IMG/VR virus record: IMGVR_UViG_3300040801_001224
Coordinates: 62,001-126,000 of that record
Direction: 5' to 3' (one strand)
DNA length: 64,000 nucleotides
Shown: positions 19,881-63,164 of the stretch, piece after piece
Position numbering within the stretch: the first letter of the stretch is position 1
Layout: every line of letters starts with the position of its first letter
Position numbers and translations under genes: made by a program
Notes under the pieces: model-generated
The model's input: only the letters and a program-made list of their open reading frames with translations
The model's database searches: none
Told to the model about the DNA's origin: nothing

Positions 19881-21548
19881 ATGAACGAACGAGAACAAAT
19901 TATAGAACTTATCAAACAAAAACCAAAACATGTAACACAAATTATTAAAAGAGATGATCGGTTATCGATGTATGTATCGGATAATAAAAGAGTTAGTTCG
20001 GCTATATACGCAGAAGAAGTGTATTCGGCTATATACCCAGAAACAACGAACATATGTCCTAATAATAACTTAAAAAAGTTTAAATCGATTAAAGCCGGTT
20101 ATGCTTTTTGTGGCAGGGCAAACTCGTGCGAATGCGCTCGAAAGTCTGTGTCAGATAGTGTGTCGGCGAGTAAATCGAAATTTACAGATAACGATATATT
20201 AAATATTAACCGCAAACGAGAAGCAACCAATATAAAAAAATACGGAGTAAGCAATGTTGGACAGACAGCAAAAGCCAAAGCCAATCACCAAGCATATTAC
20301 GCAGACGACAATAATGTGTCTAAAACTGTTAAACAAATCGAACAAACAAAATTAGATAATTGGGGCAATAAGCATTATAATAATAGTCAGCAAATATCCT
20401 CTACCTGGCGGCAAAAGTCAGATAACGAAAAACAAAGAATAACCAAACAACGATTAAAAACGTATGCTGATAAGTATGGAGATAAGTCACTTCACCTTCT
20501 TCAGTCTTGGTATGATAAATTATGTGATTTTTTCGAAACTCACTACGATGTCAGTATGCTAACAAGCAAAGAAGAATACGTGGGTGTAAGTAACCAACAA
20601 TATTACGAGTTTAAGTGTAATAAATGCGAAGCAGAATTTACTACATACATAGATAATGGCCATCCGCCAATTTGTAAAAAATGTAATCCATCTCCTAAGT
20701 CTCAACCAGAACAAGATATACATGATTGGCTTGTAATGCATGGCATAGATCACGAGATGAACAACAAAACTATTTTAGATGGCAAAGAACTTGACATATA
20801 CATACCGGAAAAAAATATAGCAATTGAATATTGCGGTCTATATTGGCATTCGGATTTTCATAGTAGGATTGACAAATGGTATCACTACGACAAATGGAAA
20901 CAATGCCGAGACAAGAACATCCATCTTATAACTATATTCTCAGACCAATGGGTTCATAAGCGTGATATTGTACTTAAACGTCTTGAAACTAAATTAAAGA
21001 TAAATGTTAAATCTATCGGGGCTCGGAAAACACGTATACGCGAACTAACGAACACAGAAGAAAAAGAATTCTTCTTATTTAATCACATACAAGGCTACAA
21101 TCCAAGTAGAGTGGCTTATGGTTTAATAGAAAATGGCGAAATTGTAGCGGCCATGAGTTTTAAAAAGGTAAGATACCATAGCAAAGATTTATCAAAGGAC
21201 GACTGGGAATTACTAAGGTTTGCTTCATGTAAAAATGTGCAAGGCGGTGCAAGTAAACTTTTTAGGCATTTTATTAAAACAGTCGCCCCTTCGAAAATAG
21301 TTAGTTATAGTGATAATGACTGGAATACAGGGGGATTATATGAACAACTAGGGTTTACGTTGTCGAGGATTAGTGGACCATCATACTGGTACGCCAATGT
21401 CAACGATGATATTAGGTATCATCGGTTTAATTTTAGGAAGAAGGACACCGACCCTGACATGCCAGAAAATCAACGTGTATTTGAATCGCATAAATATCTA
21501 AGGTTTTGGGATACAGGCAATACTCGTTGGATATGGCAAGCCAGTTAA
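19881..21548 (+). CDS. Hef-like homing endonuclease (PD-(D/E)xK/Vsr-like nuclease plus GNAT/Mom-like C-terminal domain)
   Basis: CNKC...CKKC Zn ribbon; ELDIYIPEKNIAIEYCGLYWHS; NHIQG, WELLRFAS, GGASKLF, SYSD...GGLYEQLGF; own GATAAATA at 19848-19855. Confidence 0.75.
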   Translation: MNEREQIIELIKQKPKHVTQIIKRDDRLSMYVSDNKRVSSAIYAEEVYSAIYPETTNICPNNNLKKFKSIKAGYAFCGRANSCECARKSVSDSVSASKSKFTDNDILNINRKREATNIKKYGVSNVGQTAKAKANHQAYYADDNNVSKTVKQIEQTKLDNWGNKHYNNSQQISSTWRQKSDNEKQRITKQRLKTYADKYGDKSLHLLQSWYDKLCDFFETHYDVSMLTSKEEYVGVSNQQYYEFKCNKCEAEFTTYIDNGHPPICKKCNPSPKSQPEQDIHDWLVMHGIDHEMNNKTILDGKELDIYIPEKNIAIEYCGLYWHSDFHSRIDKWYHYDKWKQCRDKNIHLITIFSDQWVHKRDIVLKRLETKLKINVKSIGARKTRIRELTNTEEKEFFLFNHIQGYNPSRVAYGLIENGEIVAAMSFKKVRYHSKDLSKDDWELLRFASCKNVQGGASKLFRHFIKTVAPSKIVSYSDNDWNTGGLYEQLGFTLSRISGPSYWYANVNDDIRYHRFNFRKKDTDPDMPENQRVFESHKYLRFWDTGNTRWIWQAS

Positions 21549-49920: not shown

Positions 49921-50055
49921 ATGTTGTATAAGAGTGATTATGTTTCTGAAGAAGAACGTAAAGATATTGAAAAAGCGTACAGTAGCAAAAAACAGAAACG
50001 TAAGTTACAAAATACAATACCTGTAAAAGGAAATGACAGAAGAAGTCAGAATTAA
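49921..50055 (+). CDS. 44-aa basic upstream ORF overlapping the GGDEF-EAL start (not in ORF track)
   Basis: AAGGAGG (49907-49913), 7 nt, ATG; MLYKSDYVSEEERKDIEKAYSSKKQKRKLQNTIPVKGNDRRSQN*. Confidence 0.55.
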   Translation: MLYKSDYVSEEERKDIEKAYSSKKQKRKLQNTIPVKGNDRRSQN

Positions 50056-52009
50056 TTTTTATAAGATTGCTCTTGTATACTGGGTAGTGTTTGCTCTATT
50101 TGAGCTTCTGATGCACAGCATTTATATGAGTGGAGCAGGCGCTTATAGCAAAGTTGCCATCGTCGAAGCGATTTTATTTATATCTGGCATTGTGCTAACA
50201 ATACTTGCCAAAAATTCTCTCAAAGACGAAAGCAAAAAGATATATGATGAGCAGTATGAGAGAAAGATCAGGGATCTAGCATCACGTTCACCAACAATGG
50301 GAAGTGACGAATATTTCTCAGTCCTAACAAAAAACATTATTGATGCTGTTGGCTGTGATTATGTTGTTATTGGACAAATAAATTATACTGATAATACTAG
50401 TAAACCATACATAACAACTAAGTCAGCTCGTGGTAGAAATAGAGAGTATCTCCAAACTGAAGTATTATTAAAGACGAGCAACTGTCAAGTAACTGTTCAG
50501 GACATTGAAGATGCTGACCTATCTAGAATATTTAAGGGCAAAAAAGGCAGACACATAAACATGCCACTAGTGTCTAGTGATAACGATATCCATGGTATCC
50601 TGTCTTGTATTTGGATCGGCCCTGATCATCCGCCCAAAACTGCCAAAAACGTACTCAAAATATTTTCGACACAGTGTCAGTCAGAACTTGAGCGATTACT
50701 TACTGAAGAAAAACTTAAATATCAGGCAACTCACGATGAGTTAACTGGCCTACCAAATCGAAACTTTGTAATGGAAAAGTTAAAAGGTATAGTTACTAAA
50801 TACAATTCGGGTGTCATAACTAATAAAACATATAACGTTTATTTTATTGACCTGGATGATTTTAAAGAAGTTAATGACGAATTTGGGCATGACGCTGGCG
50901 ACCAGTTATTAGTGGAGATATCAAGAAGATTGGAGTCATGTGTGAGGGAAGAAGACACGGTGGCAAGACTAGGAGGCGATGAGTTTGTTATTGTTGAAGC
51001 AGGATCAACGAATGTTTCTTCAATTTCGCTATCAGATAGAATTATCAATAAATTACAGCAAGCCGTAAATCTTCATGACAACGTTTCTGTTACCGTGACT
51101 GCTTCAGTCGGGCATTTATGTATTCCTGAAGATTCACAAGATGTGACTGAAATATTCAAGTATGCTGACTTTGCCATGTATTACGCTAAATCACTGGGTA
51201 AGAATGTTGGTGTTAAATTTACTCAAGAACTATTCCGTGATTGTCAGCAAGAAAAAGTTATTGAAGGAAAGCTCATTAGTGCCATTGAGAATAAAGAAAT
51301 TGACATGGCCATCCAGCCAATTGTTGATCATAATCAAAAGATAGTGAAAGGTGAGGTACTGGCAAGATGGTTCTCAGATGACATTAGTCTAACAATTGAA
51401 GATGTGATTAACATTGCTGAGAGACGTGGCCTTATCGTTGCGTTCAGTAAACACATATTTGAAAAGTCAGCTGAATACTGCTCAGAACTTAAATTCGAAC
51501 ATGGCATTTATGCTAGACTCGCTGTTAACTGCTCGCCACTACTGTTTAAGGATCCAGAGTTTGTGCCATATATTTCCAGTGTGTTTGATAAGTATAACAT
51601 AAGTCCTAAACAAATTACTCTTGAAATTACAGAGTCAGTAGCAAGTAAGCACAAGGAAATATTGCCTACTATTGTCGACTTAAAGAGTAGGGGATTTGAA
51701 CTGGCACTTGACGATTTCGGCAAGGGATATTCATCATTGAGTTTTCTAGAAACCTTGCCAATTGATGTAGTGAAACTTGATAGGGCATTGGTTACAGACG
51801 CAATTGGCAACAAGAAGAAGTCTACATTATTGAAAGCCGTAGCTGAGATTTGTAAGGTGTATGAATACAAGTTGGTTGCCGAGGGAATTGAAACTAAAAA
51901 AGACTTTGAGTTTTTGAAAAAATTGGGGTATGACTGGCTACAAGGATATTACTTTTCTAGACCGGTACCATCAGAAGAATACACAAAGTTATTGACACAG
52001 GAGAAATAA
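50033..52009 (+). CDS. Membrane-anchored GAF-GGDEF-EAL diguanylate cyclase / phosphodiesterase
   Basis: Two N-terminal hydrophobic helices; HDELTGLPNR, FIDLDDFKEVNDEFGHDAGD, REED I-site, RLGGDEF; EVLARW, VNCS, LEITES, DDFGKGYSS, VKLDR, AEGIE, LQGYYFSRP. Confidence 0.95.
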   Translation: MTEEVRINFYKIALVYWVVFALFELLMHSIYMSGAGAYSKVAIVEAILFISGIVLTILAKNSLKDESKKIYDEQYERKIRDLASRSPTMGSDEYFSVLTKNIIDAVGCDYVVIGQINYTDNTSKPYITTKSARGRNREYLQTEVLLKTSNCQVTVQDIEDADLSRIFKGKKGRHINMPLVSSDNDIHGILSCIWIGPDHPPKTAKNVLKIFSTQCQSELERLLTEEKLKYQATHDELTGLPNRNFVMEKLKGIVTKYNSGVITNKTYNVYFIDLDDFKEVNDEFGHDAGDQLLVEISRRLESCVREEDTVARLGGDEFVIVEAGSTNVSSISLSDRIINKLQQAVNLHDNVSVTVTASVGHLCIPEDSQDVTEIFKYADFAMYYAKSLGKNVGVKFTQELFRDCQQEKVIEGKLISAIENKEIDMAIQPIVDHNQKIVKGEVLARWFSDDISLTIEDVINIAERRGLIVAFSKHIFEKSAEYCSELKFEHGIYARLAVNCSPLLFKDPEFVPYISSVFDKYNISPKQITLEITESVASKHKEILPTIVDLKSRGFELALDDFGKGYSSLSFLETLPIDVVKLDRALVTDAIGNKKKSTLLKAVAEICKVYEYKLVAEGIETKKDFEFLKKLGYDWLQGYYFSRPVPSEEYTKLLTQEK

Positions 52010-55898: not shown

Positions 55899-56693
55899 AT
55901 GTCCAGTTTTCTTGAAATCCGCAATGTTGTGGCTAAAGAAATCGACTTAAACAATTGTGATAAAAAATATGATCACAAATATTTCTTAGCATCAATGTAC
56001 TTTGCCCAGCTAGTCTATTTTCGATGGGAGTTTGTCATCTGTTCATTGAAGTCTTTACCTGGTTATGTTTCTCATGAAATATATGATATAGATGGCGTCC
56101 AAGCATTCATGGTAGAATTTGAGAAAACAGCGTGGGTGTCATTCCGTGGCACTGAAATGAAGATCAACGACTGGAAAACAATCCTTAAATTTTGGCAAAA
56201 CGACTACAATAATACTGAAGCTCATGATGGCTTTGCCAGTGCGTTGAGTAAGATCAAAGATCCCGTACTTCGAAAAATTACACAAATGCGAGTAGCTGGC
56301 AAGAGAATACATTTCGTTGGCCATTCAATGGGTGGCGCTCTAGCTACCCTGTTGGCAATTACCCATAAGCCGGAATCCTTAATTACTTTTGGTTGCCCTA
56401 GAGTACTTAAAGGTGATTACTATAAAGAATACTTTCTTTCATTCCCATTTTTTAGAATGGAAAAGCAATGGGATCCTATCACACACATTCCGTGGGCAAT
56501 GCCATTCATCACAACATATAGACATGTTGGCAAGGCGATTGAAATGCCGGGTGAATTTGCCTTCATAAAAAATCATTTCATCAAATCATATTTAAGAACA
56601 GCATTGAACGAATACTATGCTGAATCAACTGGTATCCCAACATCTTTCGCCAGAGTATCAGCAAGAGATCTAAAGCGTATAAAATCATCTTGA
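55899..56693 (+). CDS. Class 3 lipase (alpha/beta hydrolase)
   Basis: VSFRGT, HDGF, VGHSMGGALA nucleophile motif, TFGCPRV, DPITHIP. Confidence 0.9.
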   Translation: MSSFLEIRNVVAKEIDLNNCDKKYDHKYFLASMYFAQLVYFRWEFVICSLKSLPGYVSHEIYDIDGVQAFMVEFEKTAWVSFRGTEMKINDWKTILKFWQNDYNNTEAHDGFASALSKIKDPVLRKITQMRVAGKRIHFVGHSMGGALATLLAITHKPESLITFGCPRVLKGDYYKEYFLSFPFFRMEKQWDPITHIPWAMPFITTYRHVGKAIEMPGEFAFIKNHFIKSYLRTALNEYYAESTGIPTSFARVSARDLKRIKSS

Positions 56694-56718
56694 CAAAACC
56701 ACTACACTATGTTATAAT
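56690..56718 (+). promoter_or_regulatory. sigma70-type promoter with extended -10
   Basis: TTGACA (56690-56695), 17 bp, TG-N-TATAAT (56713-56718). Confidence 0.85.
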
Positions 56719-56724
56719 GTTAGT

Positions 56725-56889
56725 GTATAGAGGTAAAACTCGTGTGGACGTTCGCGGTGTAAGGGGCTCGTCGGCTGATCTCAATATGAATAACTCAACA
56801 CACCACATACATAGAAGTGTTGACGTTTCTTATAGTAGGCAAAAAACCGCATAATACATGTAAATGACCCTGAGGGTGGTTCTCTATAC
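56725..56889 (+). ncRNA. Candidate ~165-nt rod-like small RNA or structured leader
   Basis: The predicted +1 region GTATAGAG (56725-56732) pairs with CTCTATAC (56882-56889); internal helices GCGGT/ACCGC and TAAGGGGC/GTTTCTTA. Confidence 0.4.
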
Positions 56890-56939
56890 TTGACATCAGA
56901 AATGATGAGTGATCCGCCCACATATATAAAGGAACTAAT

Positions 56940-57413
56940 ATGAGTAAAGAAATCGAACGAAAGTTTTTAGTAAATCAGAAACAATTGCCAGCATTATTTG
57001 ATCCAGACTATATCATCCAGGGATATTTACATTCTGATGAAAACAAATCAATCCGAGTGCGTGTCAACAGTGATGGATATAATGCTAAAGGCACACTGAC
57101 AGTTAAGAGTCGTCGTGTAGGCTTAACCTGTGACGAATATGAATATGAAATCCACCCAGACGATGCTCAAGAAATGCTTGATAATATGTGTGACAAAACA
57201 ATGTGTAAAGAACGCTATTACATCAAGCACGATGATCATATGTGGGAGATTGACGTGTTCCAGGGTGATAGTGAAGGGCTTGTTATTGCTGAAATAGAAC
57301 TGTCTACTGAAGGTGAGAAGTTTCCATTTCCAGACTGGGTTGATGCCGAGATATCAGATGATCCCAAGTATTTGAATGTCAATTTATTGGAAAATCCTTA
57401 TAAAAATTGGTAA
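56940..57413 (+). CDS. CYTH-domain (triphosphate tunnel) enzyme, CyaB-like
   Basis: EIERKFL (ExExK), IQGYL, IRVR, EYEYEI, KERY, WEIDVF, AEIEL, PDW..EISDDPKY. Confidence 0.92.
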   Translation: MSKEIERKFLVNQKQLPALFDPDYIIQGYLHSDENKSIRVRVNSDGYNAKGTLTVKSRRVGLTCDEYEYEIHPDDAQEMLDNMCDKTMCKERYYIKHDDHMWEIDVFQGDSEGLVIAEIELSTEGEKFPFPDWVDAEISDDPKYLNVNLLENPYKNW

Positions 57414-57423
57414 TTTACATTCT

Positions 57424-57450
57424 GTAACATTCGTAACATTCGTAACACTT
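57424..57450. repeat. Three tandem 9-bp repeats upstream of flagellin
   Basis: GTAACATTC GTAACATTC GTAACACTT. Confidence 0.8.
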
Positions 57451-57498
57451 AACAGGCTCAAAATACCCGTAACCGACCCAAAACCAGGGTACTCAAAG

Positions 57499-57506
57499 CA
57501 TAAATA
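57499..57506 (+). promoter_or_regulatory. Late-promoter-like motif upstream of flagellin
   Basis: CATAAATA, one mismatch to the local GATAAATA consensus, 36 nt before the ATG. Confidence 0.5.
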
Positions 57507-57542
57507 AAAGTGTAGAGCATATATAATCGAGGAGAAAGGAAT

Positions 57543-58358
57543 ATGATTACTATTAATTCAAACACATTGGCTTCATCTATTAGTAATAACTTTAATAGTA
57601 TTAGCAAGCGCATCGATGATGTTTCACGTTCAATTGCGTCAGGCAAGAGAATTAACTCAGCTAAGGATGACCCTGCTGGCTTATTCCAAGCAAACGCATT
57701 ACGCACACAGACGAGCTCATACAACGTAGTTCGCAATAACTTAACATTTGGTACTTCACTATTGGAAACAGCAAGTTCAGCATTAAGCACAGTCGTAAAT
57801 GACTTGGGCAAGATGCGTGACCTAGCTGTCCAGGCGGCAAGTGGCACACTTTCAACAGAAGGTCGTGCGGCACTACAGGCAACATTTGCAGAATACCAGT
57901 CACAGATTGATGATACGGTATCTAACGCATCAGTATTCGGCCAGAACTTAGTTTCGGCGGCCGCGGCAGATGTTGATATCCAGTCAGGCATCAACGCAGG
58001 TCAGACAACTACCGTTACAGCGGCGGCTTCAGATGCTACGACATTGGGTGTTAATGCGTTAGACTTAACTTCAGAAGCAAATGCGTCAGCGGCTATCACA
58101 GCCATTGATACTGCTATTGCTACGGCCGGTACTAACCAGTCTACGTTTGGTGCCCAGTTAAATCGCATTGAATCAATTGACGCAAATGTGGCTAACATTG
58201 TTGAAAATTTAGAATCAGCACGTTCACGTATTGAGGATGCTGATGTAGCACAGCTAACAACAGACCTAGCACAGTTGCAGGTTCAACAGCAGTTAGCGTC
58301 AGCAATGTTAGGAATTGCTAACCAGTTACCACAGAGCTTCTTAACACTATTACGTTAA
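57543..58358 (+). CDS. fliC: Flagellin (minimal, D0/D1 only)
   Basis: SGKRINSAKDDPAG, MRDLAVQAASGT, FGAQLNR, NLESARSRIEDAD, ANQLPQSFLTLLR. Confidence 0.95.
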   Translation: MITINSNTLASSISNNFNSISKRIDDVSRSIASGKRINSAKDDPAGLFQANALRTQTSSYNVVRNNLTFGTSLLETASSALSTVVNDLGKMRDLAVQAASGTLSTEGRAALQATFAEYQSQIDDTVSNASVFGQNLVSAAAADVDIQSGINAGQTTTVTAAASDATTLGVNALDLTSEANASAAITAIDTAIATAGTNQSTFGAQLNRIESIDANVANIVENLESARSRIEDADVAQLTTDLAQLQVQQQLASAMLGIANQLPQSFLTLLR

Positions 58359-58371
58359 AGGGTGAATAACA

Positions 58372-58722
58372 ATGGACGTTGGCCAAGTTAAATCACAGTA
58401 TAGCTTAGTAGCAGGGAATAAAGGAGACATCAAACCTCCCGAGCCTCCTAAAGGAACTGCTACTGAACCGCTCGTTCGTGATTACAGCATTGAAGAGATG
58501 CAGGATTTGGCTCGGGCGGCAAATGCTTCTATGCCCAATAGTAGTATTCGTTTTAAGATTGATGAACAAGGCGAGCCGCCTATCATTGTCATTATTGATC
58601 CAGAAACAGATGAAATAGTAAGACAGATACCTCCAGAAGAGATTCAAAATATCAGAGATATGGTTGAGTCTCTTCAAAATGGAGAAAGTTACATAACTAA
58701 TTTTATAGATAGGTACGCATAA
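58372..58722 (+). CDS. flaG: FlaG-like flagellar protein
   Basis: IRFKIDE...IVIIDPETDEIVRQIPPEE; directly after flagellin. Confidence 0.88.
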   Translation: MDVGQVKSQYSLVAGNKGDIKPPEPPKGTATEPLVRDYSIEEMQDLARAANASMPNSSIRFKIDEQGEPPIIVIIDPETDEIVRQIPPEEIQNIRDMVESLQNGESYITNFIDRYA

Positions 58723-59072
58723 TGAATACAGGCATAGATGCTTATAAAAAAGTTTCAGTAGAAACATCCACTCCGGAAGATCTTTCAATGAAGGTCATTA
58801 ACAGTATCCTTTCATACATTAAGGAAGCACAACTCCTGCCATTGGAGACACCAAAGTACAAAGAGTGTTTACTTAATGCTCAGATGCTTTGTGTGGGCGC
58901 CATATTTAGTCTATCAGGCAATGAGCGCACAAAGGCTAATGTTGTACTGACTAACGTATTTGACAGTGTTCAAAGTGAACTATTGCTTGTTTTAAAAGAT
59001 GGTACCGGTGACCTAAACCAATGTAAGCGTCTACTAAGCCTATTAACTGAAAAGCCAGAATACATAGGATAG
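58722..59072 (+). CDS. fliS: FliS-like flagellin export chaperone (divergent)
   Basis: N-terminal AYKKVSVETSTPEDL motif; helical; position after fliC-flaG; TAATG coupling. Confidence 0.72.
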   Translation: MNTGIDAYKKVSVETSTPEDLSMKVINSILSYIKEAQLLPLETPKYKECLLNAQMLCVGAIFSLSGNERTKANVVLTNVFDSVQSELLLVLKDGTGDLNQCKRLLSLLTEKPEYIG

Positions 59073-59113
59073 TGATAAATAAGTGTACTAATAACCATTT
59101 AATGGAGTACACA

Positions 59114-59755
59114 ATGAAATATATATTACTTGCGATTACACTTGCCTTCACACTTATCACACAAGCAAGTGATGAAAAATCCGTTAATCAAATACCACAA
59201 GCGGCGACTAAGTCACTTGATAGGCTACTTAAATCACAAGACAACAGCGCCGAAGCTCGCTTAAAGAGACAAGTCATCCAGCTACAGAATGAACTTCGCT
59301 CAGCCAATCGAGCTTATTACGCATTGTCTAAAGAAAACGAAGATCTTAGAATTCAACTTGAAGCATCACAGCAATCTGAAGCATATGCCGAACCTGAAGA
59401 AGAATTATATACAGCTGAGCAAGTTGAAGAACTAGTCCAGAACGCACAGAACGAAGTGTGGTCAGACAGCATGATCTACAGAATTGCTGAGCGTGAATAC
59501 TTACTGGCTCAAGACAATATCGTTCATGGAAAATTTATAGTAGAAGATATGTTAGCTTCAGATTATGCTAACCTACGCTCAGTATATGGCGAAGATTTTG
59601 ATTTTAGCTCTTATGTAGGTAAAGCAGTTGAAGAGTACAGAACTTACTTTGAAGCCAGATTCCCGCGTGGTGAAGAGTTACATAAAGCAACCACTGAAAT
59701 ATTATCAGCAATGTGTACAGTGGGTCCACAAGAACCAGAATTAGGAATTGAATAA
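59114..59755 (+). CDS. Secreted/periplasmic coiled-coil protein
   Basis: MKYILLAITLAFTLITQA signal peptide; GGAG RBS; GATAAATA at 59074-59081. Confidence 0.65.
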   Translation: MKYILLAITLAFTLITQASDEKSVNQIPQAATKSLDRLLKSQDNSAEARLKRQVIQLQNELRSANRAYYALSKENEDLRIQLEASQQSEAYAEPEEELYTAEQVEELVQNAQNEVWSDSMIYRIAEREYLLAQDNIVHGKFIVEDMLASDYANLRSVYGEDFDFSSYVGKAVEEYRTYFEARFPRGEELHKATTEILSAMCTVGPQEPELGIE

Positions 59756-59758
59756 AAA

Positions 59759-60214
59759 ATGCCACCAGAAGATAACAGAGAAGGTATTCTATTAGAAATA
59801 TCACCAATACAGTTTGTGAGTGTAGTTGGAACAATAGCATCTGCTATCGTTGGCGTTACTATATATGTTGTTTTAAACTACACACCACTCAACTCGCACA
59901 CGACTCTATCACAGAAACATGATGCTCTATCAGGAAAGACTACTACGATTATCGAAGAGAACGCAAAGGTGCCAGTGGCACTGGACGTTATGTCCAGTAA
60001 AATCGTTGATCTAACCCAAGACATTGACAGCAAAATAGCAGAAGTTGAAGAAAGAAATCTAACCCTACGTAGGAATGTGTTGATACGTATCAAGGACGAC
60101 GTTGGCGGTGTTGCCAACATGAAAAAAGAACATCGTGCTGAACTACGTGACATTGAAGACATTATGCTACAGCAAGGATACTTATCCCCAGCCTCGAGGA
60201 CACAGGGCCTGTAA
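59759..60214 (+). CDS. Single-pass membrane protein with coiled coil
   Basis: IQFVSVVGTIASAIVGVTIYVVL hydrophobic helix, then a heptad-like region. Confidence 0.6.
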   Translation: MPPEDNREGILLEISPIQFVSVVGTIASAIVGVTIYVVLNYTPLNSHTTLSQKHDALSGKTTTIIEENAKVPVALDVMSSKIVDLTQDIDSKIAEVEERNLTLRRNVLIRIKDDVGGVANMKKEHRAELRDIEDIMLQQGYLSPASRTQGL

Positions 60215-60220
60215 AATAGG

Positions 60221-60249
60221 TTGACAGCACCACTTATTTGTAGTATAAT
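60221..60249 (+). promoter_or_regulatory. sigma70-type promoter
   Basis: TTGACA, 17 bp, TATAAT. Confidence 0.85.
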
Positions 60250-62078: not shown

Positions 62079-62453
62079 GGCGTTCGGATAAGGGCTGGTA
62101 TCCCGGAGAACTCACTGGCTGAAGAAGCTATAGACCTCCTTAAGTGCCATTGCGTAAAGCATAAATCAGTTCGCCGTTTTAATTCGATGAAGTAATTTAA
62201 TGATACTGTGGACGCCAGTTCGAATCTGGCCATCTCCACCAAATCTATGGGGATGAATTAGGTTTCGACAGGGTATACTGAGAATTATGGAGAATCAGTC
62301 AATGCTAAAGGCTGTGAGGATTGGGAGTAACACCTTTAATGGTGCTCGGTCGAAGAAGCAAAAAAATAATTGAAAATGATGAAATTTTCGCATTAGCGGC
62401 ATAGACCGTTAACGGGGTTTTACACCGTCTTCCTTGTTATCAAAAGACGGTGT
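62079..62453 (+). ncRNA. ssrA: Circularly permuted (two-piece) tmRNA; outer boundaries approximate
   Basis: T-arm GCCAG-TTCGAAT-CTGGC plus CATCTCC-A-CCA ends at 62241; 7-nt spacer; GGGGATG starts at 62249 (G3.U pair); tag ORF ENDEIFALAA* at 62372-62404. Confidence 0.9.
62422..62453. terminator. Hairpin at the tmRNA 3' end, overlapping the convergent gene stop
   Basis: ACACCGTCTT (62422-62431) / AAGACGGTGT (62444-62453). Confidence 0.6.
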
Positions 62454-63096
62454 CTTTATGTATGCTATAGTGTTGGCGTAACCCGTTCACTGACTTTTCT
62501 TCTCCGCAAATAATACAAGAACATTTTATTCTGCTACTATTATTTTTAGAAATTTTTTCTCTGGTAGTTTTGGATAATTTTCTTCCCTTCCCTTGCCCAG
62601 TGCGATCTATGTTTCTTATCTTCGGGTCATGCATTGGGTTGTTGTTTTTTAATCGTTCCGAAGCTTGCCGGCGTTGTTCGTTAGTCCATTCGTACCCTCC
62701 ACCACCTGGTCTAGATACTCCTTTATTTGACTCAGATATTTTTCTTTTGTGTTCTTCAGAAAAAGATCGTCCAGTATTGGCCTGACTTATTGTTTTTTTG
62801 TGTTCGTCAGATATTACCCTCGGTCCACCATCTGTTCCGTTTTCTATAGCAAGATTTGCCCATTCTTTTGATTCTACGATTTGGTTTAGCTTTGAAAAAA
62901 GTGTAGAAAATCTTTTTAGCTTTTCTAAGCTTTTGAATTCCTTATACCACAAGGTATCGATAAATTTGCCGTGTTTCTTGATGTGACGTAACCAGTATTT
63001 GCCCGATCCGGCATATTTAGTCGGCTCATTTTTTGTCTTGCCGAAATATTTGAGCCCGGTTTTCTGGTGCTGTTTTATATATAGATAAATACTCAT
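62440..63096 (-). CDS. GIY-YIG (Seg-like) homing endonuclease with NUMOD3-like repeats
   Basis: IYLYIKQHQKTGLKYFGKT, YAGSG, WANL..ENG..GG, SDEHKKTIS / SEEHKRKIS; likely start MSIYLY at 63096 after AGGAG. Confidence 0.8.
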   Translation of the reverse strand: MSIYLYIKQHQKTGLKYFGKTKNEPTKYAGSGKYWLRHIKKHGKFIDTLWYKEFKSLEKLKRFSTLFSKLNQIVESKEWANLAIENGTDGGPRVISDEHKKTISQANTGRSFSEEHKRKISESNKGVSRPGGGGYEWTNEQRRQASERLKNNNPMHDPKIRNIDRTGQGKGRKLSKTTREKISKNNSSRIKCSCIICGEEKSVNGLRQHYSIHKDTVF

Positions 63097-63100
63097 GCTG

Positions 63101-63164
63101 ATACTCCTATTCAGTATTAGAGTAGTCGGATACGCCAATATCGCGGACTACATTTTTATTTATC
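63101..63164 (-). promoter_or_regulatory. Late promoter plus structured leader of the homing endonuclease
   Basis: GATAAATA (- strand, 63157-63164); GTAGTC/GACTAC stem with inner GATA/TATC; competing TACTC/GAGTA stem over the RBS. Confidence 0.5.

What the first reader, a model, noticed from the sequence alone, without database searches (positions are those of the whole stretch)
57543..59072. Phage-borne flagellin-FlaG-FliS cassette with fliD cleanly missing
Seen: three tightly packed genes (13-nt gap, then a TAATG overlap) with clear flagellin N- and C-terminal signatures, the FlaG RQIPPEE motif and the FliS AY..V.VET..P motif, embedded among phage genes. Known: bacteria commonly have fliC-flaG-fliD-fliS(-fliT); FliS chaperones flagellin for type III export and FliD caps the filament. 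I know of no characterised lytic phage with this set. Inference: the phage kept the subunit and its dedicated chaperone but relies on (or subverts) the host cap and export gate. Outcomes could be filament resurfacing to block flagellotropic phages, filament poisoning or shedding, sustained motility of the virocell, anti-FlgM/FliS titration, or a flagellin-derived virion fibre.
Basis: partly seen in the sequence, partly recalled or inferred. Interest (0 to 1): 0.95.

Follow-up and report, generated by a model that had tools for sequence, protein, structure and literature searches.

The report
Jumbo-phage flagellin, FlaG, chaperone operon
A giant bacterial virus carries its own long-maintained gene for the protein that builds the bacterial swimming filament, plus that protein's escort and a filament-length regulator, and dozens of uncultured large phages carry the same filament-escort pair, so these viruses probably rebuild or tamper with their host's flagellum during infection.

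Summary
Window 57543-59072 holds three tightly packed + strand genes. They encode a 271-aa minimal (D0-D1) flagellin, a 116-aa FlaG and a 116-aa four-helix flagellin chaperone. The chaperone is FliS-like by fold, context and a conserved Tyr, but it scores below the FliS model cut-offs. The genes sit in a T4-superfamily jumbo phage (a 328-kb IMG/VR contig) between rIIA/lipase/CYTH and small phage ORFs.

This is not a chimera or a recent host capture:
- Synteny recurs in independent samples.
- Codon usage matches the other phage genes.
- dN/dS is about 0.1.
- The flagellin belongs to a 76-member clade that contains every homologue I found in a phage-like context and none of the 79 bacterial-genome flagellins in the tree. 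Bacterial flagellins are at most 42% identical.

The conserved core is flagellin plus its co-evolving chaperone, found in 18 of 19 loci. FlaG is one of two alternative accessories; the other is a FlgK-like hook-associated protein. FliD was not found in any locus.

My best explanation (confidence 0.42) is a phage-private flagellin-chaperone pair that is delivered to the host flagellar export gate late in infection. It would extend or replace the host filament, and FlaG would compete with host FliS-flagellin at FlhA. Function is untested. The rivals are gate or regulator interference and a virion-associated polymer.

The parts
57424..57447 (+). Three tandem GTAACA hexamers (period 9), about 100-120 nt upstream of the flagellin ATG. 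A candidate cis-regulatory element specific to the phage flagellin gene.
   Evidence: This is the only exact tandem occurrence in the 64-kb window. The same tandem GTAACA/GTAATA copies lie upstream of the flagellin in L025, L026 and L004. In ten other hairpins from nine phage loci the hexamer GTAAYA is the loop of a 4-7 bp hairpin whose stems covary.
57499..57506 (+). CATAAATA, a one-off variant of the phage's recurrent GATAAATA motif (T4 late-promoter-like), 44 nt before the flagellin ATG. Probable promoter of the operon.
   Evidence: GATAAATA occurs 23 times against 4.35 expected (0 of 100 shuffles), mostly 15-123 nt upstream of gene starts, including structural operons. [T/G/C]ATAAATA lies upstream of the flagellin in L025, L026, L018, L010, L019, L016 and L009. 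No sigma-70-like site lies upstream of the cassette. Late timing is inferred, not shown.
57530..57534 (+). Shine-Dalgarno AGGAG, 8 nt before the ATG.
   Evidence: Read from the sequence. A strong AAGGAG-type site is present in nearly all related loci.
57543..58358 (+). Flagellin, 271 aa, minimal D0-D1 type, member of a phage-specific clade.
   Evidence: Pfam Flagellin_N and Flagellin_C match at full length. The fold matches solved filament flagellins. It lies in a 76-member clade with SH support 99 and no bacterial-genome member. dN/dS is 0.10.
58372..58722 (+). FlaG, 116 aa.
   Evidence: PF03646 scores 47 bits against a cut-off of 23.8. NCBIfam FlaG equivalog models match only weakly. Orthologues hold the same position in L025, L026 and L004. 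FlaG is also present in L011 and L114.
58722..59072 (+). Flagellin secretion-chaperone-like protein (FliS/FlaF-like four-helix bundle), 116 aa, translationally coupled to flaG by the TAATG overlap.
   Evidence: The model's top fold matches are FliS structures. There are weak full-length FliS HMM matches. A homologue sits beside the flagellin in 18 of 19 loci. Y8 is at least 90% conserved in A2 and aligns with the FliS Tyr. Pairwise identities track those of the flagellin (Mantel r 0.77).
59074..59081 (+). GATAAATA motif marking the start of the next transcription unit and so the downstream boundary of the cassette. The next gene probably starts at ATG 59114 (MKYILLAITLAF..., a signal peptide).
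50033..52009 (+). Context, not part of the operon: a 658-aa membrane GGDEF-EAL protein (c-di-GMP turnover) 5.5 kb upstream.
   Evidence: Pfam GGDEF 2.6e-39 and EAL 2.1e-56. GGDEF, EVLxR, ExTE, DDFGKG and EGIE motifs are intact in the translation.

Best explanation
The operon is a phage-owned flagellar filament module.

Proposed mechanism:
1. Late in infection the phage makes large amounts of its own minimal flagellin.
2. Its private chaperone (FliS/FlaF-like) binds the flagellin C-terminal D0 helix. This keeps the flagellin monomeric and docks it, through the conserved N-terminal Tyr, onto FlhA of the host flagellar type III export gate.
3. The flagellin is exported and polymerises under the host's existing FliD cap. 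That is why no phage fliD would be needed.
4. Phage FlaG, a known antagonist of FliS-flagellin docking at FlhA, biases the gate against host FliS-flagellin complexes or limits how much is exported.

The net effect would be that the infected cell's filament is maintained, extended or re-surfaced with phage flagellin after host gene expression has been shut down. This is a protein-level counterpart of the transcriptional flagellin switch of temperate FR-phi phages.

The most likely benefit is control of the motility behaviour of the infected cell, because c-di-GMP, chemoreceptor/CheW and MotY-like genes occur in the same phages. Masking of a flagellar receptor is a secondary possibility.

Shown here: gene identities, phage ownership, purifying selection, co-evolution of the pair and the variable accessories. 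Inferred: late timing, export through the host gate, incorporation into the filament and the benefit.
For: - Identities: flagellin and FlaG pass Pfam cut-offs. The chaperone fold matches FliS.
- Gate docking: the only residue conserved in at least 90% of the chaperone alignment A2 is Y8. hhalign places it on the FliS 'AY' Tyr. Tyr-10 of FliS is the FlhA_C docking residue (PMC8527033).
- FlaG: its only known activity is at the FlhA gate, where it competes with FliS-flagellin, and it is itself secreted (PMC11536152).
- FlgK-like proteins in relatives keep the axial-protein N- and C-terminal domains (Flg_bb_rod, FlgK_D1, Flg_bbr_C). These domains are typical of exported flagellar axial proteins.
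- The flagellin-chaperone pair is adjacent in 18 of 19 loci and co-varies.
- The flagellin is the most conserved gene in its neighbourhood: 81% identity against 43% for rIIA, with dN/dS 0.10. In most cases it is the only gene shared between the window and the other loci.
- In none of the loci examined does the cassette sit among recognised structural genes. The neighbours are rIIA, DNA polymerase B, DnaB, RNA ligase, Thg1 and NAMPT.
- Motility-related genes occur in the same phages: GGDEF-EAL, MCP plus CheW in L002, HDOD in L114, MotY_N/OmpA plus GGDEF in L113.
- Precedent: prophage FliCP is exported and assembled by host machinery, and also by E. coli (PMC13418256).
Against: - There is no experimental or expression data, and the host is unknown.
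- The phage clade has replaced about 40 columns that are at least 80% conserved in 135 other flagellins, including D69, Q75, R90, E114, N132, R199 and Q258. Co-polymerisation with a host lattice, junction and cap is therefore uncertain.
- A host-interacting subunit might be expected to track host flagellins. This one is a single phage clade with no close bacterial relative.
- The promoter-like motif is the one that precedes structural operons, which fits a virion component equally well.
- The chaperone fails FliS HMM cut-offs and sequence-profile searches of PDB.
- FlaG is absent from many members, so it cannot be essential to the core function.
Confidence: 0.42

Rival explanations
1. Interference or decoy. 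The module does not build filament. It jams or rewires the host flagellar system. Over-produced phage flagellin-chaperone complexes and FlaG occupy FlhA and stop host flagellin export, or they cap or poison filaments. Alternatively, cytoplasmic phage flagellin titrates flagellin-sensing regulators (FliW-CsrA, FlbT/FlaF, FlgM via FliS). That would change host translation and save energy and proton-motive force for phage production.
For: - About 40 canonical flagellin positions have been replaced by clade-specific conserved residues. This fits a subunit that binds partners but need not fit the host lattice.
- FlaG is a gate antagonist.
- Some chaperone-family members weakly match FlaF, the partner of the FlbT translational control system.
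- A conserved 5' hairpin or tandem hexamer upstream of the flagellin suggests dedicated post-transcriptional control, as in flagellin homeostasis circuits.
Against: - A blocker would not need a full-length, polymerisation-type D0-D1 flagellin conserved over its whole length.
- FlgK-like accessories suggest assembly rather than blockade.
- Genes that favour motility or chemotaxis in the same phages fit poorly with switching motility off, although a GGDEF-EAL protein could act in either direction.
Confidence: 0.2
2. Receptor resurfacing. The export-and-assembly mechanism is the same as in the best explanation, but the selected benefit is to cover or replace the host filament with a flagellin that flagellotropic phages cannot bind. 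Those phages could include the phage's own progeny. This would give superinfection exclusion and less loss of progeny on cell debris.
For: - Several jumbo phages use flagella as receptors (titles; review).
- The phage flagellin lacks outer domains and differs at many D1 positions.
- A late-type promoter motif fits action shortly before lysis.
Against: - Flagellin adds only at the distal tip, so the older host segment of each filament stays exposed.
- In the one studied case (FR-phi), exclusion and flagellotropic competition were tested and not supported.
- Nothing here shows that this phage is flagellotropic.
Confidence: 0.15
3. Virion or cytoplasmic polymer. The flagellin is a phage structural protein. 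The chaperone keeps it soluble in the cytoplasm, and it polymerises on the particle into a fibre. In relatives a FlgK-like adaptor would nucleate this. The host export apparatus is not involved.
For: - The clade is phage-specific and appears to have been kept within phages, with no bacterial-genome member and no close bacterial relative.
- Constraint is strong and the flagellin is the most conserved gene locally.
- The promoter-like motif is shared with structural operons, and the Shine-Dalgarno is strong.
- Canonical lattice residues are replaced.
- FlgK-like proteins could act as adaptors.
Against: - In none of the loci examined does the cassette lie among recognised head or tail genes.
- FlaG has no known role outside the export gate.
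- The chaperone keeps the FlhA-docking Tyr.
- The related cultured jumbo phages in INPHARED, which include PA5oct and Atu_ph07, gave no flagellin hit.
- No viral protein in BFVD has this fold.
Confidence: 0.13
4. Artefact. The cassette is an assembly chimera, host contamination or a decaying recent capture with no function.
For: The contig is a metagenome assembly, and no reads were available to check the junctions.
Against: - The order rIIA-lipase-CYTH-flagellin-FlaG-chaperone-downstream genes recurs in contigs from independent samples at about 80% protein identity (L025, L026).
- GC3 and codon adaptation equal those of the portal and capsid genes.
- dN/dS is about 0.1 for all three genes.
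- Fifteen further IMG/VR loci of the phage clade carry the flagellin, and those with enough flanking sequence also carry the chaperone.
- No bacterial genome flagellin exceeds 42% identity.
Confidence: 0.01

Closest known systems
FR-phi prophages of Enterobacter: prophage-encoded flagellin FliCP with the RNA-guided repressor TldR (Walker et al., Nat Microbiol 2026, PMC13418256; bioRxiv 10.1101/2023.11.30.569447)
   Same: A phage-encoded flagellin that relies on the host's flagellar machinery. The proposed outcome, a filament made of phage flagellin with changed properties, is the same.
   Different: - FR-phi is a temperate siphovirus. Its FliCP has enlarged outer domains, and the switch is transcriptional: TldR represses host fliC.
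- The FR-phi paper mentions no FliS or fliD anywhere in its text.
- Here the carrier is a T4-superfamily jumbo phage and the flagellin is minimal (D0-D1).
- No TnpB/TldR-like domain was found in the adjacent ORFs scanned.
- The partners are protein-level factors: a private chaperone, FlaG or a FlgK-like protein.
- The flagellin forms its own phage clade.
Bacterial flaA/fliC-flaG-fliD-fliS(-fliT) operons of polar flagellates (Vibrio, Pseudomonas, Campylobacter, Shewanella). FlaG acts as an FlhA-gate antagonist (Waller et al., PNAS 2024, PMC11536152).
   Same: The order flagellin-FlaG-chaperone. FlaG matches the Pfam family. The chaperone has the FliS fold and the N-terminal Tyr. The flagellin is a canonical D0-D1 hairpin most like the Shewanella, Roseburia and Caulobacter minimal flagellins.
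   Different: - fliD is absent.
- The chaperone is far below FliS model thresholds.
- Flagellin identity to bacteria is at most 42%, with about 40 canonical positions changed.
- In most phage relatives the chaperone precedes the flagellin, and FlaG is replaced by a FlgK-like gene or by nothing.
- Transcription appears to depend on a phage late-type motif rather than sigma-28 or sigma-54. This is inferred.
Caulobacter-type FlaF (flagellin secretion chaperone) and FlbT (5'-UTR translational control) system (PMC7591256)
   Same: A small helical flagellin chaperone encoded next to minimal flagellins. Six of 89 phage chaperone-family members weakly match Pfam FlaF. A conserved 5'-proximal hairpin precedes the phage flagellin genes, which is reminiscent of 5'-UTR control of flagellin mRNAs.
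   Different: No FlbT homologue was identified. All FlaF matches are below threshold. The hairpin's binding partner is unknown.
Cyanophage psbA and other phage 'auxiliary' copies of high-turnover host proteins
   Same: Same logic only: a virulent-type phage carries its own copy of an abundant, exposed or short-lived host component to keep a host function running after host shut-off.
   Different: psbA copies are usually close to host genes. This flagellin clade has no close bacterial relative. It also brings its own chaperone and assembly accessories.

Membership tests
Bacterial flagellin (Pfam PF00669 Flagellin_N + PF00700 Flagellin_C) | Both terminal helical regions match above the curated cut-offs over their full length. 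| tested here: met
   90.8 bits against 26.6 (model positions 1-136 of 139) and 65.7 bits against 23 (1-86 of 86).
Bacterial flagellin (Pfam PF00669 Flagellin_N + PF00700 Flagellin_C) | D0-D1 helical hairpin fold as in assembled filaments. | tested here: met
   AF2 model with pLDDT 79. Foldseek against PDB: 92 hits at E<=1e-3. The top hits are Shewanella FlaA/FlaB, Roseburia, Leptospira and Caulobacter FljK filaments, at TM 0.67-0.71.
Bacterial flagellin (Pfam PF00669 Flagellin_N + PF00700 Flagellin_C) | Near-universal D0/D1 residues of canonical flagellins, for example the R90/E114 region and the C-terminal AQAN motif. | tested here: not met
   28 conserved columns are shared. About 40 columns that are at least 80% conserved in 135 other flagellins differ in the 76-member phage clade. 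D69, Q75, R90, E114, N132, R199, L248 and Q258 are kept in 0-4% of members. This is not a formal defining feature, and I recall that some TLR5-evading functional flagellins also lack part of it.
Bacterial flagellin (Pfam PF00669 Flagellin_N + PF00700 Flagellin_C) | Exported by the flagellar T3SS and polymerised into a filament. | not testable with these tools
   Needs expression, secretion and EM assays.
FlaG (Pfam PF03646) | Match to the family model above the curated cut-off. | tested here: met
   47 bits against 23.8. NCBIfam equivalog models are far below their cut-offs (25.2 against 154), so this is a family member and not an equivalog of any named FlaG.
FlaG (Pfam PF03646) | Encoded beside the flagellin and chaperone genes. 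| tested here: met
   The position is the same in L025, L026 and L004.
FlaG (Pfam PF03646) | Binds FlhA and limits filament length. | not testable with these tools
   Known from C. jejuni only.
FliS flagellin export chaperone (PF02561 / TIGR00208) | Match to the family models above the curated cut-offs. | tested here: not met
   Pfam 13.6 bits against 26.7 (E 0.085). TIGR00208 16.1 bits against 53.75 (E 0.009). Only 3 of 89 family members give even weak FliS hits. Family profiles find no FliS in PDB by sequence.
FliS flagellin export chaperone (PF02561 / TIGR00208) | Antiparallel four-helix bundle with an N-terminal cap helix. | tested here: met
   The AF2 model has pLDDT 85 and five helices. 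The top Foldseek PDB hits are FliS chains: 5maw_E (TM 0.65/0.67, 23% identity), 6gow_E, 3k1i_A, 6lea_A, 3iqc and 1orj. E-values are weak (0.03-0.6) because helical bundles are common.
FliS flagellin export chaperone (PF02561 / TIGR00208) | Conserved N-terminal Tyr (Tyr-10 in Salmonella) that docks on FlhA_C. | tested here: met
   Y8 is the only column conserved at 90% or more in A2. hhalign puts it on the 'KAY' Tyr of a Thalassotalea FliS, with 104 aligned columns at E 0.0014. The role of Tyr-10 comes from PMC8527033. In the deeper alignment A6 the Tyr is the majority residue but falls below 90%.
FliS flagellin export chaperone (PF02561 / TIGR00208) | Binds the C-terminal D0 segment of its flagellin. 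| not testable with these tools
   Indirect support only: adjacency in 18 of 19 loci and correlated divergence (Mantel r 0.77, 0 of 5000 permutations).
FlaF flagellin secretion chaperone (PF07309) | Match to the family model. | tested here: inconclusive
   6 of 89 family members match, with a best E-value of 0.0038. All are below threshold, and the window protein itself does not match.
FR-phi type flagellin-remodelling phage (TldR-gRNA + fliCP) | A TnpB-derived TldR gene and guide RNA next to the flagellin. | tested here: not met
   The adjacent ORFs are CYTH, Lipase_3, FlaG, the chaperone and two ORFs with no Pfam domain. No TnpB-like domain was found. Rfam finds no guide-like RNA at 57300-57600.
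FR-phi type flagellin-remodelling phage (TldR-gRNA + fliCP) | A temperate phage integrated in the host chromosome. | not tested
   The window looks like a T4-superfamily jumbo phage. The whole contig was not available to look for integrases.

The most novel reading that the evidence does not exclude
The flagellin is not sent through the host flagellum at all. A lineage of jumbo phages has domesticated flagellin as its own polymer, for example a virion-attached filament or an intracellular tube. It would be assembled in the cytoplasm with the FliS-like protein as an anti-polymerisation chaperone. In some members a FlgK-like protein would act as the nucleating adaptor. [quoted passage not shown]
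Probability: 0.13. Interest if true: 0.95.

Novelty: new variant of a known kind. Interest (0 to 1): 0.8.

Why it matters
Phage-encoded flagellin was described only recently, in temperate Enterobacter prophages, and was called there the first prophage-encoded flagellin.

This finding shows a second, independent and much larger case:
- The flagellin clade has 76 members in the tree, built mostly from clusters at 90% identity.
- Its chaperone family has 98 hits in the library of 50%-identity cluster representatives.
- Both are carried by uncultured large phages from many samples.
- The module works through protein partners (chaperone, FlaG, FlgK-like) rather than through a repressor.

If the module is exported, it would mean that virulent-type phages actively manage the motility organelle of the infected cell. 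That bears on phage dispersal, chemotactic behaviour of infected cells and flagellotropic phage competition. It would also offer an orthogonal flagellin-chaperone pair for studying substrate selection at the FlhA gate.

If it is not exported, it would be a new use of the flagellin fold.

Either way it is directly testable with standard expression, secretion, pull-down and EM assays.

Tried and rejected
- Near-identical DNA in INPHARED phages: none.
- tblastn of the flagellin against 50,697 phage records: five weak hits at 31-47% identity. Four are in unannotated records of 2-6 kb, which I suspect are host contamination. The fifth is a 43-kb faecal phage contig. None is in a jumbo phage.
- Sequence-only confirmation of FliS: failed with Pfam, NCBIfam and two family profiles against PDB. 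hhalign against single bacterial FliS sequences was weak (E 0.0014 and 0.048). The assignment therefore rests on fold, context and the Tyr.
- Search for a FlgK-like gene elsewhere on the window's contig, by a pattern scan of IMG/VR: it found only the loci already known to carry FlgK-like genes. This is not conclusive for the unread 264 kb.
- Search for FliD or other flagellar genes in the window, by phmmer against ORFs of 80 bacterial flagellin loci: only flagellin, FlaG and the GGDEF protein matched. Candidate 426-435-aa ORFs near the relatives' cassettes turned out to be a DNA ligase and an ILEI-domain protein.
- Rfam on the flagellin leader: nothing meaningful.
- Sigma-70, sigma-28, sigma-54 and CtrA-box readings of the GTAACA repeats: considered by eye and rejected because spacing and sequence do not fit.
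- Recent host capture: rejected because codon usage is fully ameliorated and no bacterial flagellin exceeds 42% identity. The 5.8-billion-protein search scored only the 8000 candidates that shared the most words, and it gave the same picture.
- L113 (two flagellins, MotY-like, GGDEF): it could not be settled as phage or bacterium. A PHROG tRNA nucleotidyltransferase match at 7e-130 favours a large phage.
- Host identification: not achieved. The FlaG link to polar flagellates and the permuted tmRNA are only hints.
Full report
**1. The observation**

The ORF listing and the raw sequence confirm three + strand ORFs: 57543-58358 (271 aa), 58372-58722 (116 aa) and 58722-59072 (116 aa). A 13-nt gap separates the first two, and a TAATG stop/start overlap joins the second and third.

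- The first ORF matches Pfam Flagellin_N and Flagellin_C over their whole lengths, far above the cut-offs.
- The second matches Pfam FlaG at 47 bits against a cut-off of 23.8.

An AlphaFold2 model of the third protein, built on a 17-sequence family alignment, has pLDDT 85. It is a helical bundle. Its best PDB matches are FliS chains from B. subtilis, H. pylori and Aquifex, at TM about 0.65 with near full-length alignment, although the E-values are weak.

The window is plainly phage. It holds a T4-type portal (61% identical to PA5oct, 53% to Atu_ph07), a major head protein, tail-fibre proteins, rIIA and homing endonucleases. It is part of a 328-kb IMG/VR contig.

**2. Not an artefact**

- Two contigs from other samples carry the same gene order at about 80% flagellin identity. 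They are L025 (Logan SRR22808019) and L026 (JGI 3300041081). The order is rIIA, Lipase_3, CYTH, flagellin, FlaG and chaperone. In L025 the same downstream genes follow.
- dN/dS is about 0.10 for the flagellin, 0.09 for the chaperone and 0.11 for FlaG. dS is near saturation.
- GC3 and codon adaptation of the three genes are like those of the portal and capsid genes.

**3. A phage flagellin clade**

A search of 5.8 billion proteins gave about 60 metagenome-only clusters at 43-84% identity, all 271-275 aa. Named bacteria appear only at about 40% identity. A scan of one genome for each of 185,579 species found nothing above 42%.

In a FastTree of 211 flagellins the window protein lies in a 76-member group with SH-like support of 99. 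The group contains:
- every protein I traced to a phage-like context;
- every metagenome protein at 43% identity or more, plus three just below;
- none of the 79 bacterial-genome flagellins.

IMG/VR holds 15 loci of this clade besides the window's own. They include contigs of 318 kb and 137 kb, the latter from the window's own sample. The contexts I read are phage-like: DNA polymerase B, DnaB, RNA ligase, Thy1, Thg1, NAMPT/NMNAT, Acb1 and T4_Y16D. One locus, L113, remains ambiguous.

**4. The conserved unit**

An iterated HMM seeded with the window's third gene finds a homologue next to the flagellin in 18 of 19 loci that have enough flanking sequence.
- In most loci the homologue lies directly upstream of the flagellin.
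- In the window, L025, L026, L004 and L114 it lies downstream of FlaG.

Pairwise identities of the flagellin and the chaperone are correlated (Mantel r 0.77, 0 of 5000 permutations). The chaperone evolves much faster, with a median identity of 20% against 52% for the flagellin.

The chaperone family profile gave 98 hits at E<=1e-3 among 1.84 billion representative proteins (one per 50%-identity cluster). Nearly all are 70-130 aa. Scanned one by one against Pfam, a few members touch FliS (3 members) or FlaF (6 members), always below threshold. I therefore call it a FliS/FlaF-like flagellin chaperone, not a FliS family member.

The only position conserved at 90% or more in the 17-sequence alignment is Y8. 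hhalign aligns it with the Tyr of a bona fide FliS. In Salmonella that Tyr (Tyr-10) is critical for docking on FlhA_C (PMC8527033).

**5. Variable accessories**

The slot downstream of the flagellin holds one of the following:
- FlaG: window, L025, L026, L004, L011 and L114, with a weak match in L115.
- A 340-352-aa protein with Flg_bb_rod, FlgK_D1 and Flg_bbr_C domains, that is, a short FlgK-like hook-associated protein: L006, L008/L009, L012, L018, L019 and L020.
- Unrelated small ORFs.

FliD was not found anywhere.

Motility-related genes occur in the same phages:
- a GGDEF-EAL protein with intact motifs, 5.5 kb upstream in the window;
- a chemoreceptor plus CheW in L002;
- an HDOD protein in L114;
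- a MotY_N/OmpA protein, a GGDEF protein and two flagellins in L113.

**6. Expression signals**

GATAAATA, close to the T4 late promoter TATAAATA, occurs 23 times in the window against 4.35 expected. Most copies lie just upstream of gene starts, including structural operons.

The flagellin has CATAAATA 44 nt before its ATG, and relatives have TATAAATA or GATAAATA in the same place. There is no sigma-70-like site upstream of the cassette. The next GATAAATA, at 59074, starts the following unit. Late expression is therefore likely but unproven.

Three tandem GTAACA hexamers lie further upstream at 57424-57447. They are the only exact tandem copies in the window. They recur upstream of the flagellin in L025, L026 and L004.

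In nine other loci the same hexamer is the loop of a 4-7 bp hairpin, 30-76 nt before the ATG, and the stems differ with full compensation. Ninety per cent of cells are paired against 58% in shuffles, with 15 double-sided changes and 0 of 500 shuffles as high. One caveat is that the hairpins were picked by a script that required at least 3 bp.

**7. An unexpected property of the flagellin**

The fold is a canonical D0-D1 flagellin. Its best matches are Shewanella FlaA/FlaB, Roseburia, Leptospira and Caulobacter filaments.

Compared with 135 other flagellins, the clade shares 28 conserved columns. It has changed about 40 columns that are at least 80% conserved elsewhere, among them D69, Q75, R90, E114, N132, R199, L248 and Q258. 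It has its own conserved residues instead: P44, S59, V63, A129, F132 and Q199. Several of these changes lie in the C-terminal D0 helix, which FliS binds in known systems. That fits a private, co-diverged chaperone-substrate pair. It also means co-assembly with host subunits cannot be taken for granted.

**8. Mechanism**

I favour export through the host flagellar T3SS and assembly under the host cap (0.42). The reasons are:
- The chaperone keeps the gate-docking Tyr.
- FlaG's only known activity is at FlhA, in competition with FliS-flagellin (PMC11536152).
- FlgK-like proteins are exported axial proteins.
- In none of the loci examined does the cassette sit among recognised structural genes.
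- The same phages carry c-di-GMP and chemotaxis genes.
- FR-phi shows that a phage flagellin can be assembled by host machinery.

Rivals:
- Interference with the gate or with flagellin-sensing regulators (0.20).
- The same mechanism, selected for receptor masking (0.15).
- A virion or cytoplasmic polymer (0.13). This rival is favoured by the phage-only phylogeny, the late-type motif and the altered lattice residues.
- Artefact (0.01).

**9. Comparison and novelty**

The closest known system is the FR-phi tldR-fliCP module of temperate Enterobacter phages. That paper calls it the first known prophage-encoded flagellin. The present module differs in:
- phage type;
- flagellin architecture;
- its partners, a chaperone with FlaG or a FlgK-like protein instead of an RNA-guided repressor;
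- being a large phage-specific clade.

Other sources:
- A 2026 review of jumbo phages mentions flagella only as receptors.
- A megaphage paper notes a 'flagellar assembly' enrichment in one genome without analysing it.
- A 2026 preprint lists FlaA, FlaG, FliJ and FliI in a Nitrosospira phage.
- BFVD has no viral protein with this fold.

I rate this a new variant of a known kind, with high interest because it is widespread, unexpected for virulent-type phages and directly testable.

**10. Limits**

- The host is unknown.
- There are no expression or proteome data.
- 264 kb of the contig were not read.
- Several database scans were capped.
- The chaperone's family assignment is by fold and context only.

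Noticed in passing
window 50033-52009 (+): A 658-aa protein with two N-terminal membrane helices and intact GGDEF and EAL domains (GGDEF, EVLxR, ExTE, DDFGKG, EGIE). It is a phage-encoded c-di-GMP enzyme 5.5 kb upstream of the flagellin, and it matches phrog_11823 at 8e-109.
   Followed up: partly
window 62181-62404 (+): A permuted (two-piece type) tmRNA: Rfam RF04321 at 95.6 bits against a gathering score of 47. ARAGORN also calls a tmRNA with tag peptide ENDEIFALAA. It abuts a homing-endonuclease-like ORF (62440-63138, - strand). From memory, permuted tmRNAs are known from Alphaproteobacteria, some Betaproteobacteria and cyanobacteria, so it may be a host clue.
   Followed up: partly
window 57424-57447; L025 890-913; L026 5094-5109; L004 9933-9948; hairpins in L002, L009, L010, L013, L014, L016, L018, L019, L115: The hexamer GTAAYA is specific to the region upstream of phage flagellin genes. 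In the window's subgroup it appears as 2-3 tandem copies. In the other subgroup it is the loop of a short hairpin with covarying stems. What binds it is unknown.
   Followed up: partly
window, 23 sites, e.g. 11389, 13762, 21838, 46182, 55852, 59074: GATAAATA is strongly over-represented (23 against 4.35 expected). It sits just upstream of many genes, including structural operons, and is probably this phage's late promoter, a variant of T4 TATAAATA.
   Followed up: partly
window 60221-60249 (+): A perfect sigma-70 consensus promoter (TTGACA, 17 nt, TATAAT; 12 of 12) just after the 59759-60214 ORF. It probably starts an early transcription unit.
   Followed up: no
window 59072-59755 (+): The mechanical GTG start is probably wrong. 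ATG 59114, with GGAG 7 nt upstream, gives MKYILLAITLAFTLITQAS..., a signal peptide followed by a Q/E-rich helical region. L025 has a homologue in the same position. Function unknown.
   Followed up: partly
L002 2547-4698 (ENA ERZ23495662, 96.8-kb contig): A phage-like contig with a methyl-accepting chemotaxis protein (4HB_MCP_1 + MCPsignal) and a CheW 6 kb upstream of its chaperone-flagellin pair.
   Followed up: partly
L006 10858-11916; L009 10555-11577; L012 5688-6710; L018 10833-11855; L019 10860-11882; L020 10849-11871: A short (340-352 aa) FlgK-like hook-associated protein (Flg_bb_rod, FlgK_D1, Flg_bbr_C) lies immediately downstream of the phage flagellin. In the loci seen it occurs only where FlaG does not.
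   Followed up: partly
L113 8030-13200 (JGI 3300053699, 61.5-kb contig): Two clade flagellins, a MotY_N/OmpA protein, a GGDEF protein, a TilS-like protein and a CCA-adding enzyme lie on one contig, with no chaperone homologue detected. Whether it is a large phage or a bacterium is unresolved.
   Followed up: partly
window 57543-58358 and alignment of 211 flagellins: The phage flagellin clade has replaced about 40 positions that are near-universal in other flagellins, including R90, E114 and the AQAN glutamine, and it has its own conserved residues instead. The consequences for lattice compatibility are unknown.
   Followed up: partly
window 55899-57413; L025 410-880; L026 3728-5097: A Lipase_3 esterase and a CYTH (triphosphate tunnel) protein precede the flagellin in the three closely related phages. 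CYTH matches phrog_6660. Roles unknown.
   Followed up: no
window 19881-21548 (+): A 555-aa HNH/homing endonuclease (phrog_3339, 1e-92) sits directly after the major head protein gene.
   Followed up: no
L114 3478-3978 and 499-2169: Another flagellin-carrying phage contig encodes an Acb1-type anti-CBASS nuclease and an HDOD-domain protein.
   Followed up: no
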